Assembly: GCF_000142905.1 (NCBI RefSeq)
Contig: NW_013657664.1
Span: 276,133-340,132, forward strand
Source of the DNA: Thecamonas trahens ATCC 50062
Lineage: Eukaryota > Protista > Apusomonadida
DNA: 64,000 nt
Direction of reading: 5' to 3'
Shown: one piece after another, positions 1,188-6,553 of the stretch
Layout: every line of letters starts with the position of its first letter
Numbering within the stretch: position 1 is the stretch's first letter
Position numbers and translations under genes: made by a program
Notes under the pieces: generated by a model
The model's database searches: none
What the model saw: only the letters and a program-made list of their open reading frames with translations
Told to the model about the DNA's origin: nothing

Positions 1188-4100
1188 CTAGCTGCTGCTG
1201 CTGCCGCTGCTGCTGCTACCGTCAGCCTCGCCCTCGGGCTTTCCGGCCTCGCCGCGCAGCGCCGCGACCCAGTGGCCGAGTGCATCGGCATCCGGGACCG
1301 AGAACAGCTGAAAGCCGCGCTGCGGATGAGCAACGACAAACGAGTGCGGGCGAGCCGAGTCGAGGGTAAACGGATCGACTGACGCGCCTTGGAGCTGAAA
1401 GAACGAGACCGGCTTGGAGTCGTTCATCTTCTTGTACACCCAAAGCGTGCCCTTAGAGGCGGAGATGAAGACATCGGCCCACTTGGACTCTTTGGTGTCG
1501 TCGCGCTTGGAGACAACGCCGACCATCGACGGCTCCGGCACGTCCGTTGCCTTGAACACAACCATCGACTTGAGCCGTTTCTTAGTTGCCTTTGCCCGCG
1601 CCGACTGGCCGTCTTTCAGCTCCTTGCCCATGCCGACGAGCTGGGCATGGCGGAATCCGCCAGAGATCTGCACACCGGCCGACGAGCTCTTGCGGCGGGC
1701 TGGTGGCGCGACCGAGAGCCGAGCTCCGCGGCGGAGCGTTCCGGTCAGAGCCGGGCGCGGGGCCGACGGCGGCGGCGGCGGCGGCGCCTTGCTGGACGCC
1801 GCCGGTCTGCCGACCGAGATGGCTTCGGCTTGCAGGCCGGCGACCCACGCGTCACGCTCACCGCGGTTAGCGCAGGCAAGGATCTTAGTGCCTTGATCGC
1901 GGTGGTAGATGCAGATGCACCACTGCAGCATCGGGTCGTTCTTTTCGATCACGCCAAACTGGCAGCCAGTGAGGAGGACAAAGCCCTCGGGCCGCTCGGC
2001 ATCGGCCGACTTGTAGTAGTAAAAGTGGTGGTCCGAGACCACGCAGTAGCGCTTGGACCACTTGGAGGTCTTGAGGTCGCCGCGCTTGATGAGGTTGCCC
2101 TTCATCGATGGGTTGGCAATGGCGCTGGCCGCAGGCAGGTTCATCGTCTTCATCAGCTTGCGCCGCTCACGCTCAAGGTCCTTTTGCTGCTTCTTGAAAC
2201 GCTGCTGCACCTCGCGCCGCTCCTTGGGTGAGAGCGTGGCGTACTGCTCGCGGCTCATGAGAGTGCCAAAGCCCGAAAGCGCCGACTCCACCTCTTCGCG
2301 CGCTGTCAGCCCTGTCCCTGCCTCGGCCACAAACGACTCGGGCTTGGTCTCCGGCACCACCCGCGGAATGTGGACAAGCAAGAACCTCTGGTGCTTCTCG
2401 TCGGTGATCCCGAGCCGTGCCAGCTGACCTGTTGTTACAAACTGATCTGCGGCCTTGCCGTCAATGTTGTTCTCGCGGAAAATCGTCGAGTAGACCGAGA
2501 GATTGACGTCGATGAGCCACTGAATCATGTCGTCGACGCTGCGCGCCTCACGCCACTCGCGATGGACCTCCGGATCGTCCTCACCGGCATGCCTTGCGGC
2601 CGGCGGACTAGTGAGATCGGCGTTGGACCCGCCGGTCCGCGAAGACGCCGACCGACGCGGCGGCGGCGGCGGCACGAAATCGGAGTTGGCTGCTGCCGAC
2701 CCTGCCGCGCCGTCCTGGCTTTCGGATGGCCGAGCTCGCTGGGCCTGCGTTCGCTTCGGGCGATCCTTGGTCGGATGCTCCAGGCTCTTATCGCGTCCCT
2801 CGGGTGGAGGCGAGCTGGCGTCAAAGTTGAACATCGCCTGCGAGAGGTCGTGCATGGAGATCCGCTTCGACGCTCGCTTGTTGCGCTTTGCCAACTTAGC
2901 CGCAGCCGCGTTGATCGGCGCCCCGTCCGACGCTCCCGCACCAATGTCAGCCGCGTCCGACGAGTTGGTCGACGAGCCGGACGAGCTCGAGTACGAGCTG
3001 GACGACGAACCGTCCGACGACGTGTCAAACGAGATCTTGGTGCCGGCGGCCATCACCGGCGCAGCTGCCGGCTTTGCCGGCGCATTGGCCTTTGCGTCGG
3101 CGTTGGCCTTGGCCTTTGCTTCGGCGTTGGCCTTTGCCTTTGCCTCGGCTTCGGCCTTTGCCTTTGCCTCGGCGTCGGCCTTTGCCTTTGCCTTTGCGTC
3201 GGCCTTTGCCTTTGCGTCGGCCTTGGCCTTTGCGTCGGCCTTGGCCTTTGCGTCGGCCTTGGCCTTTGCCTTTGCCTCGGCTTCGGCCTTTGCCTTTGCC
3301 TCGGCTTCGGCCTTTGCCTTTGCCTCGGCTTCGGCCTTGCGCCTAGCCTCGGCCTCAGCTGCGAGACGGGCAGCCTCAGCCGCGGCGCGCTCGAGACGGG
3401 CGGCCTCGAGACGGGCGAGGTGGGCGGCGCGGGCGGCGGCAAGGGCGGCGCGGGCAGCTGATGCGCGGGCAGCAGACTGGATGACGATGGCGGCAGCACG
3501 CTCGCGCTTCATGCGGGCGACGCGAATGCGGGCGAGACAGGCGCGAAAGGCAGTCTGGACCCGAATGGTGGCCCACAGCCGCTTGCGGAGCCAGGCAACC
3601 CGCTGTTTGGCGAGAAAGACCCGGACCGAGCACTGCATGGTGATGACGGTTTCGCGGAGAGCCTCTGCGCGGGCGGCGTCGAGGACGTTGGAGACGCCGT
3701 CGCGAAGGAAGACCTTGGTCTTGCCGACTTGCCACTGCGCATGCGAGCCAGAAGCGTCATCGACCGGCACGGTAGCCGCAAGGATGGCGCGACACGAGTC
3801 GGCGTCGGCGGTTGCGTCCTTGTTTCCGAGCACAGCGTAGCGGGCCGTAAACTCCTCAAACGGAATCCAGACTGGGTAGGCGCGACGGCGCATCTCGATG
3901 GTGTCGAGCATGCCAAGACAGCGGACCTGGCGGACGACCGTGGCCGAGTCAAACGAGTCCTTTGAGAGCAAGTTGTTCGGCTTGAGACAGCGGACAAAGT
4001 GTGGGGTCGATGCATTGAGCGTGGTCATCAGCGAGTTGAGCGAGCGGATAAACTGCTCGGCAATGCCAGCCTTCTTCTTCTGCGAGCCGCCGCTACCGCC

Positions 4101-6125
4101 ACCACCACGGCCGCGTCGCCCGCCGCGCTTGCGCATCAGGGTTGCAGCCGCATTGGCCATCTCAGCGTCGGTGCCTGCAGCCTCGGGCTCGGCTGGCGGC
4201 GGCTTGAAGAGCTTAGCCACGAGCGGGATCGACGACATGGTGACGAGTTCGTTAAAGGCCTCGACCGGCGAGTCCTTGTTCTTGTTGAGAAAGCCGTCAA
4301 TGGCGTAGGCAACCCGGCCGGCGTAGTGGTCGACCGAGAAGCCGAGCCGTTCCTGACGGCGCTCAAACGAGTAGTGCGGCGTCGGATTGGGCATCTGGCC
4401 AAAGGCGGCGTGCATGCGGGTGAGCAAGTTATCGTCCGAGCCGTTTGGCACCTTGCACTCGTCGGTGAGCATCGAGAGAATGCCAAAGTTCTTCTTCTCG
4501 ATAAGGTCGAGGCACGCCTGATTGTCGACAAAGGCAATGTTCTCGACAGCGAGGCCCTGCTGCGCATACTCATCGAGCTGGAGCTTAAAGGTGTGTGCCA
4601 CAAAGAGCTGCTGGAGCTTCTCGTTGACAAAGTTGATGAGCAGCTGTTCGTACGAGTTGCGCTCAAAGACTTCAAAGCCAAAGATGTCGAGCAGGCCAAT
4701 GGCCGGCTTGGTGTCAGCGCTGGACGCGTCGGACGCGCCGGGTGCGGCTGCCTGGCCAGGGCCGCCAGGCGCGAGCGAGACGTTGACCTGCTTGACCAGA
4801 AACTCAAAGATGGCCTGGTATATGGTCTTGGCACAAGTGTCGCGGACAGCGACGGCTTCAGGCAGAGTGAGGGGCTTGATGTAGACCGAGGCTCGTCCAC
4901 GGGCAGCGACGGTACGCTGGGTCAGGAGCTGCGAAAGGAAACCAGCATCGATGCCGAGGAACTTAGCGATGGTCTCGACCAGCTCGGGCGTTTCGACCTC
5001 GACGGCGTCACCGCGCTCAACGAGGCGGACGTTACCGAGCTCGAGGACGGCGGCGACGACCTGAAAGATGGTCGTCTGGGCGGCGTCGTCAAGGCCGACC
5101 GAGGTGAGGCACGAAACGAGCTCGGCAAAGTCTGCGGCGTCATCGACGCCTTCGAGAGCGACTCGCTCGGGATTGATGTAGGCGTAGTCGGTGACGGTGT
5201 CGCGGAGGGCGCAGGCCTCGCGCAGCGCTGGCGGCGCGCCGCCGAGCAGCTGGTAGAAGATGTGGTAGTTGCGCTCGCGCGGCGACTGCGAGATGATGCG
5301 CGACTTTTCGAGGAGGTAGATGACAAAGGAAGCCGAGGCGAGGGCGCCGCCGGAAGTAAACTCGATCTGGATAAACTTACCGAACCGCGACGAGTTTGCG
5401 TTGCGGGTCGTGGCTGCGTTGCCGAAAGTCTCGAGGATGGGGGAGGCGGCGAGGACACGGGTGGTGAGGTCGTCGCCGGCTTTAGCTGGCGCGACGGCAT
5501 CGGGAGCCTGCGACGAGATGTGGGTGAGATACCGGAGGATGTAGCCGGTCGTCCGGGTCTTGCCTGCCCCTGACTCGCCGGTGATGATGAAGCTCTGCGG
5601 CGTGAGGGTGTCGACAGCGGCGCGGTAGACCTTGCGGGCAACGGCGTAGACGTGCGGGACGTCGTCGTCGACGGCATCCAGGTCGGCGTAGAGATCCGGC
5701 AGCGCCTCGCACGGGTTCATGGCGGTGAGAACCGAGCCGGTGTAGGTGTACACCTCCTTGGCACAGAAGCGGCGATAGAGATTGGCCACAATGTCAGGCT
5801 CGGAGAGAGCCGAGATGGTCATCATGTCCGGCACGCCGCGAGCAGCCGAATCAAAGGGAAACGAGGTGACCGTGACCGAGTTGGGTTTGTTGGCACATGC
5901 CTGAATGGCCTCGCCAGGAGTACCTGCAGCCTCCAGCACAGGTGCACCCTCGATAGGGCTCAGGTGGTTGTCAGCAATGGTACCCGAGACAATGGCAGTC
6001 TCAGGCTCGGTAGCCGCCACCTTGCAAAGTGCCCACCCACCGTCACCATGACGGACCCAGACCAAAGACCCGACCTCCACACTCGCCACATCCACGCTGC
6101 TGCTGTTGCTGCTGCTGCTTGCCAT
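1188..6125 (-). CDS. Unconventional myosin: motor, 3 IQ motifs, Ala/Lys/Glu helical repeat, CPI motif, SAM, PH, CRIB-like, PH
   Basis: Motor motifs GESGAGKT, FGNAATTRNANSSRFGKF, LDIFGFE, PHFVRCLKPN, GKTKVFLR; start taken at MASSSS (6125), just downstream of the poly-C tract; SAM-like QWLIDVNLSVYSTIFRENNIDG; two PH-like domains. Confidence 0.93.
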   Translation of the reverse strand: MASSSSNSSSVDVASVEVGSLVWVRHGDGGWALCKVAATEPETAIVSGTIADNHLSPIEGAPVLEAAGTPGEAIQACANKPNSVTVTSFPFDSAARGVPDMMTISALSEPDIVANLYRRFCAKEVYTYTGSVLTAMNPCEALPDLYADLDAVDDDVPHVYAVARKVYRAAVDTLTPQSFIITGESGAGKTRTTGYILRYLTHISSQAPDAVAPAKAGDDLTTRVLAASPILETFGNAATTRNANSSRFGKFIQIEFTSGGALASASFVIYLLEKSRIISQSPRERNYHIFYQLLGGAPPALREACALRDTVTDYAYINPERVALEGVDDAADFAELVSCLTSVGLDDAAQTTIFQVVAAVLELGNVRLVERGDAVEVETPELVETIAKFLGIDAGFLSQLLTQRTVAARGRASVYIKPLTLPEAVAVRDTCAKTIYQAIFEFLVKQVNVSLAPGGPGQAAAPGASDASSADTKPAIGLLDIFGFEVFERNSYEQLLINFVNEKLQQLFVAHTFKLQLDEYAQQGLAVENIAFVDNQACLDLIEKKNFGILSMLTDECKVPNGSDDNLLTRMHAAFGQMPNPTPHYSFERRQERLGFSVDHYAGRVAYAIDGFLNKNKDSPVEAFNELVTMSSIPLVAKLFKPPPAEPEAAGTDAEMANAAATLMRKRGGRRGRGGGGSGGSQKKKAGIAEQFIRSLNSLMTTLNASTPHFVRCLKPNNLLSKDSFDSATVVRQVRCLGMLDTIEMRRRAYPVWIPFEEFTARYAVLGNKDATADADSCRAILAATVPVDDASGSHAQWQVGKTKVFLRDGVSNVLDAARAEALRETVITMQCSVRVFLAKQRVAWLRKRLWATIRVQTAFRACLARIRVARMKRERAAAIVIQSAARASAARAALAAARAAHLARLEAARLERAAAEAARLAAEAEARRKAEAEAKAKAEAEAKAKAEAEAKAKAKADAKAKADAKAKADAKAKADAKAKAKADAEAKAKAEAEAKAKANAEAKAKANADAKANAPAKPAAAPVMAAGTKISFDTSSDGSSSSSYSSSSGSSTNSSDAADIGAGASDGAPINAAAAKLAKRNKRASKRISMHDLSQAMFNFDASSPPPEGRDKSLEHPTKDRPKRTQAQRARPSESQDGAAGSAAANSDFVPPPPPRRSASSRTGGSNADLTSPPAARHAGEDDPEVHREWREARSVDDMIQWLIDVNLSVYSTIFRENNIDGKAADQFVTTGQLARLGITDEKHQRFLLVHIPRVVPETKPESFVAEAGTGLTAREEVESALSGFGTLMSREQYATLSPKERREVQQRFKKQQKDLERERRKLMKTMNLPAASAIANPSMKGNLIKRGDLKTSKWSKRYCVVSDHHFYYYKSADAERPEGFVLLTGCQFGVIEKNDPMLQWCICIYHRDQGTKILACANRGERDAWVAGLQAEAISVGRPAASSKAPPPPPPSAPRPALTGTLRRGARLSVAPPARRKSSSAGVQISGGFRHAQLVGMGKELKDGQSARAKATKKRLKSMVVFKATDVPEPSMVGVVSKRDDTKESKWADVFISASKGTLWVYKKMNDSKPVSFFQLQGASVDPFTLDSARPHSFVVAHPQRGFQLFSVPDADALGHWVAALRGEAGKPEGEADGSSSSGSSSS
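3085..3337. repeat. Coding minisatellite of 6-nt units (GCCTTT/GCCTCG/GCGTCG) encoding the KAKAEAE/KAKADA repeat of the myosin neck
   Basis: Directly visible tandem repeats. Confidence 0.9.
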
Positions 6126-6553
6126 GGTGGTGTCAGAGGGGAGGAGCGAGGGGGGGGGGAGGGGGGGGGGGAGGGAGTCTAGTCGAATGTCCTCTTCGGA
6201 AGAAGTGTAGGCCGTTGTTTTTGGGTGGGCGAATGGGTGCCTGCCGCACCGCACCGCATGCGTCACACACTGCTCACTACTGGGGATGGGGACGGGGATG
6301 GGGAGGGGGGAGGGGAGGGGGATGGAATCGGGCATCAGGTCGCGGTTAGGGGTAGTGGCAGATCGGGGTTGGGAGATTTGGGGGGGGAGGGGGGATGGAG
6401 GGATGGAGGGATTTGCCTGGTTTGCCTGTGGGTATGGGGGTTGCGTGCGTGCGGCATGCGGTGGGGCATGGGCATTCTTTGGGAAGGCGATGGTGGGCGG
6501 TTGTTGCGGCGCATGGTTGGATGGGCGGGTGCGTATGGTTGGATCGGTGGCTG

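What the first reader, a model, noticed from the sequence alone, without database searches (positions are those of the whole stretch)
2727..2783. Myosin tail carries a capping-protein-interaction (CPI) motif
Seen: the tail contains LEHPTKDRPKRTQAQRARP. Known: the CPI consensus LxHxTxxRPK..P is used by CARMIL, CD2AP/CIN85, CKIP-1, CapZIP and FAM21 to bind and allosterically loosen actin capping protein, and CARMIL acts with myosin-I as a separate adaptor. Inference: motor and capping-protein regulator are fused here, giving a myosin that could deliver or uncap CP at barbed ends. I do not recall a CPI motif inside a myosin.
Basis: partly seen in the sequence, partly recalled or inferred. Interest (0 to 1): 0.8.

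Follow-up and report, generated by a model that had tools for sequence, protein, structure and literature searches.

The report
Myosin tail with capping-protein-binding motif
A myosin motor of the protist Thecamonas trahens carries, in a floppy stretch of its tail, the short sequence that other proteins use to grip and loosen the actin capping protein. Every computer test I could run supports binding, and this would be the first myosin with its own capping-protein regulator, but no related species or bench data exist to confirm it.

Summary
One intronless ORF (window 1188-6335, minus strand, 1715 aa) encodes a myosin, and LEHPTKDRPKRTQAQRARP is residues 1185-1203 (window 2727-2783). The genome is Thecamonas trahens. 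The core LxHxTxxRPK is complete and matches human CARMIL1 (LEHFTKLRPKR) at 9 of 11 positions, including the two residues whose mutation abolishes CARMIL1-CP binding. The distal Pro sits 2 residues late, and there is no CSI motif. The motif lies in a predicted disordered linker between an A/E/K helix and a SAM domain, upstream of two PH domains. It is the only in-frame strict core in the genome; about 0.16 are expected by chance per proteome. The only Pfam hit on the segment is CARMIL_C (E 3e-4, below cut-off), and the top PDB hits are CARMIL1 CP-binding peptides. The genome encodes CP alpha and beta with the CPI-contact residues conserved. A complex prediction scored 0.74 against 0.00 for controls, with H, T, R and P of the motif on CP beta S39/D42/Y62. 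No ortholog or paralog of the tail exists in any library searched, so conservation is untested. Verdict: probably (about 0.6) a genuine CPI motif in a myosin, which would be a new variant of a known kind.

The parts
1188..6335 (-). Whole myosin ORF, 1715 codons plus stop, no intron detected. The open frame runs 1812 codons. The true start may be Met71.
   Evidence: GC3 is 0.64-0.86 across the ORF (0.75-0.86 from residue 169 onward).
3702..5831 (-). Motor domain, residues 169-878. P-loop GESGAGKT (253), switch I NANSSRFGK (312) and switch II DIFGFE (550) are all intact.
   Evidence: Pfam PF00063 E 2.9e-190; motifs
3450..3638 (-). Three IQ-like motifs (residues 900, 926, 952); neck and light-chain binding
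   Evidence: regex
3051..3449 (-). Ala/Glu/Lys-rich helical repeat, about residues 963-1095. It could be a coiled coil or a single alpha-helix; this is not resolved.
   Evidence: sequence read; inference
2541..3050 (-). Predicted disordered linker, residues 1096-1265: a Ser-rich stretch, a basic cluster (KLAKRNKRASKRIS), the CPI motif and a polyproline run
   Evidence: charge-hydropathy falls below the Uversky boundary; 71% disorder-promoting residues
2727..2783 (-). CPI motif LEHPTKDRPKRTQAQRARP, residues 1185-1203. Core L1185, H1187, T1189, K1190, R1192, P1193, K1194.
2652..2672 (-). PPPPPRR, residues 1222-1228. It has the form of a class II SH3 ligand (PxxPxR), 19 residues after the CPI motif.
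   Evidence: sequence; the function is inference
2376..2540 (-). SAM domain, residues 1266-1320
   Evidence: Pfam SAM_2 E 7.4e-06
1827..2108 (-). PH domain 1, residues 1410-1503
   Evidence: Pfam PH E 4.4e-20, two stretches
1251..1538 (-). PH domain 2, approximately residues 1600-1695
   Evidence: second PH stretch; boundaries read from the sequence

Best explanation
The gene encodes an orphan-class myosin of Thecamonas trahens whose disordered tail linker contains a working capping-protein-interaction (CPI) motif of the CARMIL type. Shown by the sequence: an intact motor, three IQ motifs, a long A/E/K helix, a disordered linker with the CPI core, a polyproline run, a SAM domain and two PH domains. 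Inferred mechanism: the CPI peptide wraps the stalk of the CP alpha/beta heterodimer. Its central Arg1192 sits in the pocket formed by CP beta S39, D42 and Y62, as in the CP-CARMIL and CP-CD2AP crystal structures. As with other CPI proteins, binding would allosterically lower CP's affinity for barbed ends and concentrate CP wherever the carrier sits. Here the carrier is a membrane-binding (PH) actin motor, so CP would be held, delivered or stripped at membrane-proximal barbed ends that the motor walks towards, for example in the ventral pseudopodia and filopodia of this gliding flagellate. In effect, the CARMIL-myosin I-CP linkage of amoebae would be built into one polypeptide.
For: 1. The core LxHxTxxRPK is complete. 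It matches human CARMIL1 at 9 of 11 positions (LEHFTKLRPKR).
2. PDB phmmer with a 61-aa segment returned CARMIL1 CP-binding peptides as 4 of the 5 hits among 177,635 sequences. The best was 3LK2_T at E 0.13.
3. K1190 and R1192 correspond to CARMIL1 K987 and R989, whose double Ala mutation abolishes CP binding (PMC3784379; numbering from 3LK3_T).
4. The only Pfam family hitting the 121-aa segment is CARMIL_C, at E 3.2e-4 over residues 1172-1214.
5. The motif lies in a predicted disordered linker, as CPI motifs do (PMC5491179).
6. It is the only in-frame strict core in the genome, with about 0.16 expected by chance.
7. CP alpha and beta are both present.
8. The CP beta residues that contact CPI motifs are conserved: vertebrate R15, S41, D44, Y64 and Y79 are R13, S39, D42, Y62 and Y77 here (PMC4598739; PMC2897767).
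9. The complex prediction with the organism's own CP gave ipSAE 0.74 (runs 0.73-0.75) against a best control of 0.00. The runs agreed in at least 66% of contacts and the partner pLDDT was 57-59. In calibration the mark was reached by 51 of 78 solved complexes and 2 of 108 mismatched pairs. The lowest-error contacts are partner residues 20-26 (H1187, P1188, T1189, K1190, R1192, P1193) with CP beta 8, 39-42, 154, 156, 169 and 193-195, and residue 62 is also in the interface.
Against: 1. The distal Pro of the consensus is displaced: Ala at +7 and Pro at +9.
2. There is no CSI motif.
3. The Pfam hit is below the curated cut-off (20.9 against 25 bits), and the PDB E-values are only 0.13-1.9.
4. No ortholog or paralog of the tail was found anywhere, so purifying selection on the motif is untested.
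5. The nearest paralog, AMSG_00585, and its metagenomic ortholog lack both the motif and the SAM domain.
6. CP-CPI complexes are solved, so the prediction may score from memory. The tool was not calibrated on peptides, disordered chains or four-chain jobs, and CP alpha had to be given as two exon products.
7. A chance match somewhere in the proteome is not negligible (about 0.16), and the scan looked at many windows.
8. There is no expression, splicing or binding data.
Confidence: 0.6

Rival explanations
1. Chance match. A basic, Pro-rich disordered linker happens to spell the 6-residue CPI core. It does not bind CP in the cell and the linker is only a spacer.
For: About 0.16 chance matches are expected per proteome, and about 2 in six frames of the genome; three meaningless out-of-frame or antisense hits were indeed found. 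The distal Pro is misplaced. No orthologs exist to show constraint. The nearest paralog lacks the motif. The profile and PDB hits are sub-threshold.
Against: The match goes beyond the minimal core to E, K and R, as in CARMIL1; a 9-residue identity is expected about 3e-5 times per proteome, although this is a post hoc figure. It lies in an actin motor, in a disordered region and next to membrane-binding domains, which is the setting of known CPI proteins. The complex prediction puts the core residues on the crystallographic pocket, while controls scored 0.00.
Confidence: 0.28
2. The basic stretch (KRNKRASKR ... RPKRTQAQRARP) serves another purpose: a nuclear-localisation-like or membrane-binding basic patch, or a basophilic-kinase phosphorylation site that regulates the tail. 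Its likeness to a CPI motif would then be incidental.
For: Two basic clusters lie within 50 residues, and there are Ser/Thr residues in RxxS/T contexts (KRASKRIS, RPKRT). CARMIL also has a basic membrane-binding domain next to its CBR (PMC5491179).
Against: None of these functions requires the L, H, T and P core residues. No tool result supports any of them specifically. They are also compatible with CP binding rather than exclusive of it.
Confidence: 0.07
3. The motif binds CP, but CP serves as the cargo adaptor or anchor rather than as the regulated target. For example, the myosin could dock on the CP that caps the Arp1 minifilament of dynactin, or on capped filaments, and so link the myosin to dynein-dynactin cargo.
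For: CP is a dynactin component (general knowledge; PMC3583065 appeared but was not read). The binding evidence is the same as for the main explanation.
Against: No evidence here separates this from barbed-end regulation, and dynactin genes were not examined.
Confidence: 0.05

Closest known systems
CARMIL1 (LRRC16A) CP-binding region, CPI motif (PDB 3LK2, 3LK3, 3AAE, 2KZ7)
   Same: The core LEHxTKxRPKR is identical at 9 of 11 positions, including the K987 and R989 equivalents. It lies in a disordered region of a protein that also has PH-type membrane binding and a proline-rich stretch downstream. The top PDB hits and the only Pfam hit are CARMIL.
   Different: The host is a myosin, not a PH-LRR-HD scaffold. 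There is no CSI motif (RxDEGxEEFFxKR). The distal Pro is shifted by 2 residues. The Pfam score is below the cut-off. CARMIL reaches myosin I through an SH3-polyproline contact, whereas here the motor is in the same chain.
Amoeba myosin I-CARMIL-CP-Arp2/3 complex (Acan125, Dictyostelium p116)
   Same: It brings together a myosin motor, a CPI motif and CP (PMC5491179).
   Different: It is a non-covalent assembly through the myosin-I SH3 domain. The myosin here is not class I (no TH1 or SH3 domain) and no Arp2/3-activating VCA-like region was seen.
CKIP-1 (PLEKHO1), and CD2AP/CIN85
   Same: A CPI motif combined with a membrane- or adaptor-targeting module; CKIP-1 has a PH domain. The proposed logic is the same: CP is recruited to membranes.
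   Different: These have no motor domain and the sequences outside the motif are unrelated. This comparison rests on the literature, not on an alignment made here.
Samd14 / Neurabin-1 (SAM-domain proteins with a CP-binding segment)
   Same: A CP-binding segment and a SAM domain occur in one protein (PMC9282853).
   Different: The Samd14 segment is non-canonical (3 of 7 consensus residues) and lies far from the SAM domain. Here the core is canonical and lies 63 residues upstream of the SAM domain. No homology was tested.
Thecamonas trahens AMSG_00585 (P0004) and its metagenomic ortholog P0003
   Same: This is the closest myosin head (44-46% identity). The layout is the same: head, neck, charged helix, polyproline, PH domains.
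   Different: It has four PH domains, no SAM domain and no CPI motif. It is a paralog in the same genome (100% identical to own locus L028), not an ortholog.

Membership tests
CPI-motif proteins (CP-interaction motif, LxHxTxxRPK(x)6P) | Core consensus L-x-H-x-T-x-x-R-P-K | tested here: met
   L1185, H1187, T1189, R1192, P1193 and K1194 are all present. The consensus is as quoted in PMC9282853, PMC5491179 and PMC4598739.
CPI-motif proteins (CP-interaction motif, LxHxTxxRPK(x)6P) | Distal proline exactly seven residues after the Lys ((x)6P) | tested here: not met
   Position +7 is Ala1201 and the Pro is at +9 (P1203). phmmer needs a 2-residue gap to align it with the CARMIL1 Pro.
CPI-motif proteins (CP-interaction motif, LxHxTxxRPK(x)6P) | Residues equivalent to CARMIL1 K987 and the central Arg (R989; CD2AP R493), which are required for CP binding | tested here: met
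   K1190 and R1192 are present (alignment; PMC3784379; PMC2897767).
CPI-motif proteins (CP-interaction motif, LxHxTxxRPK(x)6P) | The motif lies in an intrinsically disordered segment | tested here: met
   By charge-hydropathy and composition, residues 1140-1265 fall on the disordered side while the head, SAM and PH domains do not. This is a composition-based test only, because the structure prediction job failed.
CPI-motif proteins (CP-interaction motif, LxHxTxxRPK(x)6P) | A cognate CP alpha/beta heterodimer is present with the CPI-contact residues intact | tested here: met
   F-actin_cap_A E 5e-62 and F_actin_cap_B E 3e-99 in the own genome. Beta R13, S39, D42, Y62 and Y77 correspond to vertebrate R15, S41, D44, Y64 and Y79.
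CPI-motif proteins (CP-interaction motif, LxHxTxxRPK(x)6P) | The peptide docks on the CP stalk at the crystallographic CPI site | tested here: met
   The complex prediction scored 0.74 against a best control of 0.00. The interface includes beta 39-42 and 62 contacting H, T, R and P of the core. This is a prediction and may reflect memory of solved complexes.
CPI-motif proteins (CP-interaction motif, LxHxTxxRPK(x)6P) | Measured direct binding to CP and allosteric weakening of capping | not testable with these tools
   This needs purified proteins.
CPI-motif proteins (CP-interaction motif, LxHxTxxRPK(x)6P) | The motif is conserved within the carrier protein's own family | tested here: inconclusive
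   No ortholog of the tail was found among 1.84 billion representatives (best hit 96.9 bits, PH domain only), in the word search, in the metagenome scan or in the own genome.
CARMIL family | PH-LRR-HD scaffold architecture | tested here: not met
   Pfam finds Myosin_head, SAM_2 and PH only. A separate CARMIL-like PH-LRR gene lies on contig C71.
CARMIL family | CSI motif RxDEGxEEFFxKR after the CPI motif | tested here: not met
   It is absent from residues 1204-1265. It is also absent from the CARMILs of lower eukaryotes (PMC5491179).
CARMIL family | CARMIL_C (PF16000) at or above the gathering score | tested here: not met
   20.9 bits against a cut-off of 25, covering only profile positions 191-234.
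Myosin superfamily | Myosin head with P-loop, switch I and switch II | tested here: met
   PF00063 at 634 bits. GESGAGKT, NANSSRFGK and DIFGFE are present.

The most novel reading that the evidence does not exclude
In apusomonads the job of regulating capping protein has been built into a membrane-binding actin motor. This myosin carries the only canonical CPI motif in the T. trahens genome, while the genome's CARMIL-like PH-LRR protein has none. The motor itself would then ferry, position or strip CP at the barbed ends it walks towards. That would be a single-chain 'Rosetta stone' of the amoeba myosin I-CARMIL-CP complex, in the sister lineage of animals and fungi.
Probability: 0.3. Interest if true: 0.75.

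Novelty: new variant of a known kind. Interest (0 to 1): 0.55.

Why it matters
CPI motifs are the main way cells decide where capping protein acts. All known carriers are scaffolds or adaptors, and myosins reach CP only indirectly, through CARMIL. A myosin with its own CPI motif would join force generation and barbed-end control in one molecule. It would also give a simple, testable system (one peptide, one heterodimer) in Thecamonas, the closest sequenced outgroup to animals and fungi. That bears on how the CARMIL-myosin-CP link arose. If the motif turns out to be a chance match, the case is a useful caution about calling 6-residue linear motifs.

Tried and rejected
1. Orthologs: none were found. 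I tried a word search with the tail, a full HMMER scan of 1.84 billion representatives with residues 1140-1715 and a JGI metagenome scan. One hit (P0139) seemed to span the CPI and SAM regions, but it aligns only through its SAM domains and has no motif.
2. Paralogs of the tail in the own genome: only PH-domain hits.
3. Other CPI carriers in the genome: CARMIL_C (PF16000) gave no genome-level hit, and the two weak CAP-ZIP_m (PF15255) hits are stop-ridden noise.
4. The three other DNA-pattern hits were rejected. One has Ser for Arg, one is antisense to a cNMP/RasGAP ORF, and one is out of frame with an OSCP1-like exon.
5. The CARMIL-like gene on C71 has no CPI motif in any frame of its 3' end. 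Its LSITQRTRSKYSDRSDRIP stretch matches only 3 of the 6 core positions and was not pursued.
6. Reciprocal search with P0004 against the own genome failed twice. I replaced it with tblastn on the fetched myosin loci.
7. Structure prediction of the tail: the job was interrupted and the tool then became unavailable, so disorder rests on composition only.
8. CRIB-like stretch: no Pfam PBD hit.
9. An in-frame intron removing the motif: no canonical donor/acceptor pair was found, and GC3 looks coding.
10. CP alpha is a two-exon gene. I searched and folded it exon by exon, by reference, as two separate chains. The joined protein was never built, so the step with the spliced CP alpha was left out.

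Full report
**What is there**

Window 1188-6335 on the minus strand is one uninterrupted ORF of 1715 codons. Pfam finds a myosin head at residues 169-878 (E 2.9e-190), a SAM domain at 1266-1320, and PH domains at 1410-1503 and near the C-terminus. The P-loop, switch I and switch II are intact, and three IQ-like motifs follow the head. After them comes an Ala/Glu/Lys-rich helix of about 130 residues. Next is a 170-residue linker that charge-hydropathy and composition place on the disordered side, whereas the head, SAM and PH domains fall on the folded side.

GC3 in the linker (0.75) matches the rest of the gene, and no canonical in-frame intron spans the motif.

**Whose genome**

The best database myosin head is Thecamonas trahens AMSG_00585 (P0004, 46% identity). 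That protein is 100% identical over 893 residues to another locus of the window's own genome (L028, contig C2). The genome is therefore T. trahens, an apusomonad and sister lineage to animals plus fungi. The window's myosin is a paralog of AMSG_00585. The genome has about 25 myosin genes.

**Is the match more than chance?**

- On local ORF composition the strict core LxHxTxxRPK has p = 2.4e-8 per position. That gives about 0.16 expected per proteome and about 2 in six frames of the genome.
- A degenerate DNA pattern over all 28.7 Mb found four hits, against none for the reversed pattern.
- One of the other three hits has Ser for Arg, one is antisense to a real ORF, and one is out of frame with an OSCP1-like exon.
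- The myosin therefore holds the only in-frame strict core in the genome.
- A chance match somewhere in a proteome is not rare enough to dismiss, so the case rests on the further evidence below.

**Likeness to known CPI motifs**

- phmmer of a 61-residue segment against all PDB chains returned five hits, four of them CARMIL1 CP-binding peptides from CP co-structures (3LK2, 3LK3, 3AAE, 2KZ7). The best E-value was 0.13.
- In that alignment, LEHPTKDRPKR aligns with CARMIL1 LEHFTKLRPKR, and a 2-residue gap is needed before the distal Pro.
- Using 3LK3_T numbering, K1190 and R1192 are the equivalents of CARMIL1 K987 and R989, whose double mutation abolishes CP binding (PMC3784379).
- The central Arg is the residue that salt-bridges CP beta D44 in the crystal structures (PMC2897767).
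- Scanning a 121-residue segment against all of Pfam gave one family only: CARMIL_C, E 3.2e-4 and 20.9 bits, below the 25-bit cut-off, over residues 1172-1214.
- The published consensus ends (x)6P. Here the Pro is at +9, so that feature is not met.
- The CARMIL-specific CSI motif is absent, as it is in CARMILs of lower eukaryotes.

**The partner**

The genome encodes CP beta (E 3e-99) and CP alpha (E 5e-62, two exons separated by a 626-nt GT-AG intron). CP beta aligns with vertebrate CapZ beta at E 4e-100. It keeps R13, S39, D42, Y62 and Y77, the equivalents of the R15, S41, D44, Y64 and Y79 that contact CPI motifs (PMC4598739; PMC2897767).

**Predicted complex**

I gave the tool four chains, all by reference: CP alpha exon 1, CP alpha exon 2, CP beta, and myosin residues 1168-1215. 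The spliced CP alpha was never joined.

- The score was 0.74 (runs 0.73, 0.75, 0.74) against a best control of 0.00.
- The runs agreed in at least 66% of contacts, and the partner pLDDT was 57-59.
- In the tool's calibration the mark was reached by 51 of 78 solved complexes and 2 of 108 mismatched pairs. Those counts hold only roughly for a four-chain, peptide-type job.
- The lowest-error contacts are partner residues 20-26 (H1187, P1188, T1189, K1190, R1192, P1193) with CP beta 8, 39-42, 154, 156, 169 and 193-195. Residue 62 is also in the interface. This is the crystallographic CPI pocket.
- Because CP-CPI complexes are solved, a pass may come from memory. It shows that the model treats this peptide as a CPI motif, not that it binds.

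**Conservation**

This test could not be made. I searched in four ways:

- the word search with the tail;
- a full HMMER scan of 1.84 billion representatives, where the best hit was 96.9 bits on the PH domain only and none reached E 1e-30;
- a metagenome scan;
- the own genome.

None gave an ortholog or paralog of the tail. The paralog AMSG_00585 and its metagenomic ortholog P0003 share the head-helix-polyproline-PH layout but have neither the motif nor a SAM domain. The CPI-SAM linker is thus specific to this gene as far as present data go.

**Context in the genome**

A CARMIL-like PH-LRR gene exists on contig C71. Its Carm_PH score is 26.8 bits in the genome search and 22.7 in the protein scan, so the call is marginal. 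It has no CPI motif in any frame of its 3' end. No CARMIL_C or CAP-ZIP_m match was found elsewhere in the genome.

**How it most likely works**

Shown:

- the domain layout;
- the complete CPI core;
- the presence of CP with a conserved binding pocket.

Inferred:

- The PH domains hold the tail on phosphoinositide membranes.
- The motor engages actin.
- The disordered linker presents the CPI motif to the CP stalk.
- As with CARMIL, CD2AP or CKIP-1, bound CP has reduced affinity for barbed ends and is concentrated where its carrier sits.
- The myosin would then position, deliver or strip CP at membrane-proximal barbed ends.

The polyproline run 19 residues after the motif and the SAM domain could recruit further partners; this is untested.

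I put the probabilities at about 0.6 for a functional CPI motif, 0.28 for a chance match, and the remainder on other roles for the basic stretch or on CP acting as an anchor rather than a target.

**Novelty**

Full-text searches found no report of a CPI motif inside a myosin: 33 papers mention the CPI motif, capping protein and myosin together, and none of the 20 listed does. No paper combines 'CPI motif' with 'unconventional myosin'. The two pan-eukaryotic myosin surveys that include T. trahens do not discuss capping protein. The mechanism would be the known CPI one, and the carrier, a motor, is new. I therefore class it as a new variant of a known kind, with moderate interest until binding or conservation is shown.

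Noticed in passing
G000:C71, locus L009:4355-7300 (-): A CARMIL-like gene of 981 aa with Carm_PH (marginal, 22.7-26.8 bits) plus LRRs. It ends in GGMV and Q/G/M-rich repeats and has no CPI motif in any frame of its 3' end. The genome's CARMIL homolog therefore seems to lack the CP-binding region that defines CARMIL function.
   Followed up: partly
window 1632-1667 (-), residues 1557-1568: ISGGFRHAQLVG lies between the two PH domains and resembles a CRIB core (ISxPxxxxFxHxxHVG), but without the Pro and with Leu in place of the second His. Pfam PBD gave no hit, even on the isolated 100-residue segment.
   Followed up: partly
window 2850-2891 (-), residues 1147-1160: A basic cluster, KLAKRNKRASKRIS, lies 25 residues upstream of the CPI motif. 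It could be a membrane-binding or NLS-like patch, or a basophilic-kinase site. It recalls the basic membrane-binding domain next to the CARMIL CBR.
   Followed up: no
G000:C49:271955-273925 and C49:279546-281516 (L021, L022): Two myosin heads 7.6 kb apart have identical Pfam scores (733.6 bits), which suggests a recent tandem duplication. The genome holds about 25 myosin genes in 28.7 Mb.
   Followed up: no
L002:1669-2294 (G000:C23): The CP alpha gene has a single phase-0 GT-AG intron of 626 nt that is strongly C/T-rich (long CCCTCC runs), placed between the stalk helices and the body of the protein.
   Followed up: partly
L005:1501-1530 (G000:C3) and L007:1501-1530 (G000:C24): Two perfect LxHxTxxRPK strings are artefacts of reading frame. 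One is out of frame with an OSCP1-like exon and the other is antisense to a cNMP-binding/RasGAP ORF. They are a concrete example of the chance rate of this motif in six-frame translation.
   Followed up: yes
window 6126-6335 (-), residues 1-70: The first 70 codons (Pro/Ser-rich, PLPSPLPIPVPIPS) look like a 5' leader rather than protein. Met71, followed by an SH3-like N-terminal stretch, is the more likely start.
   Followed up: no
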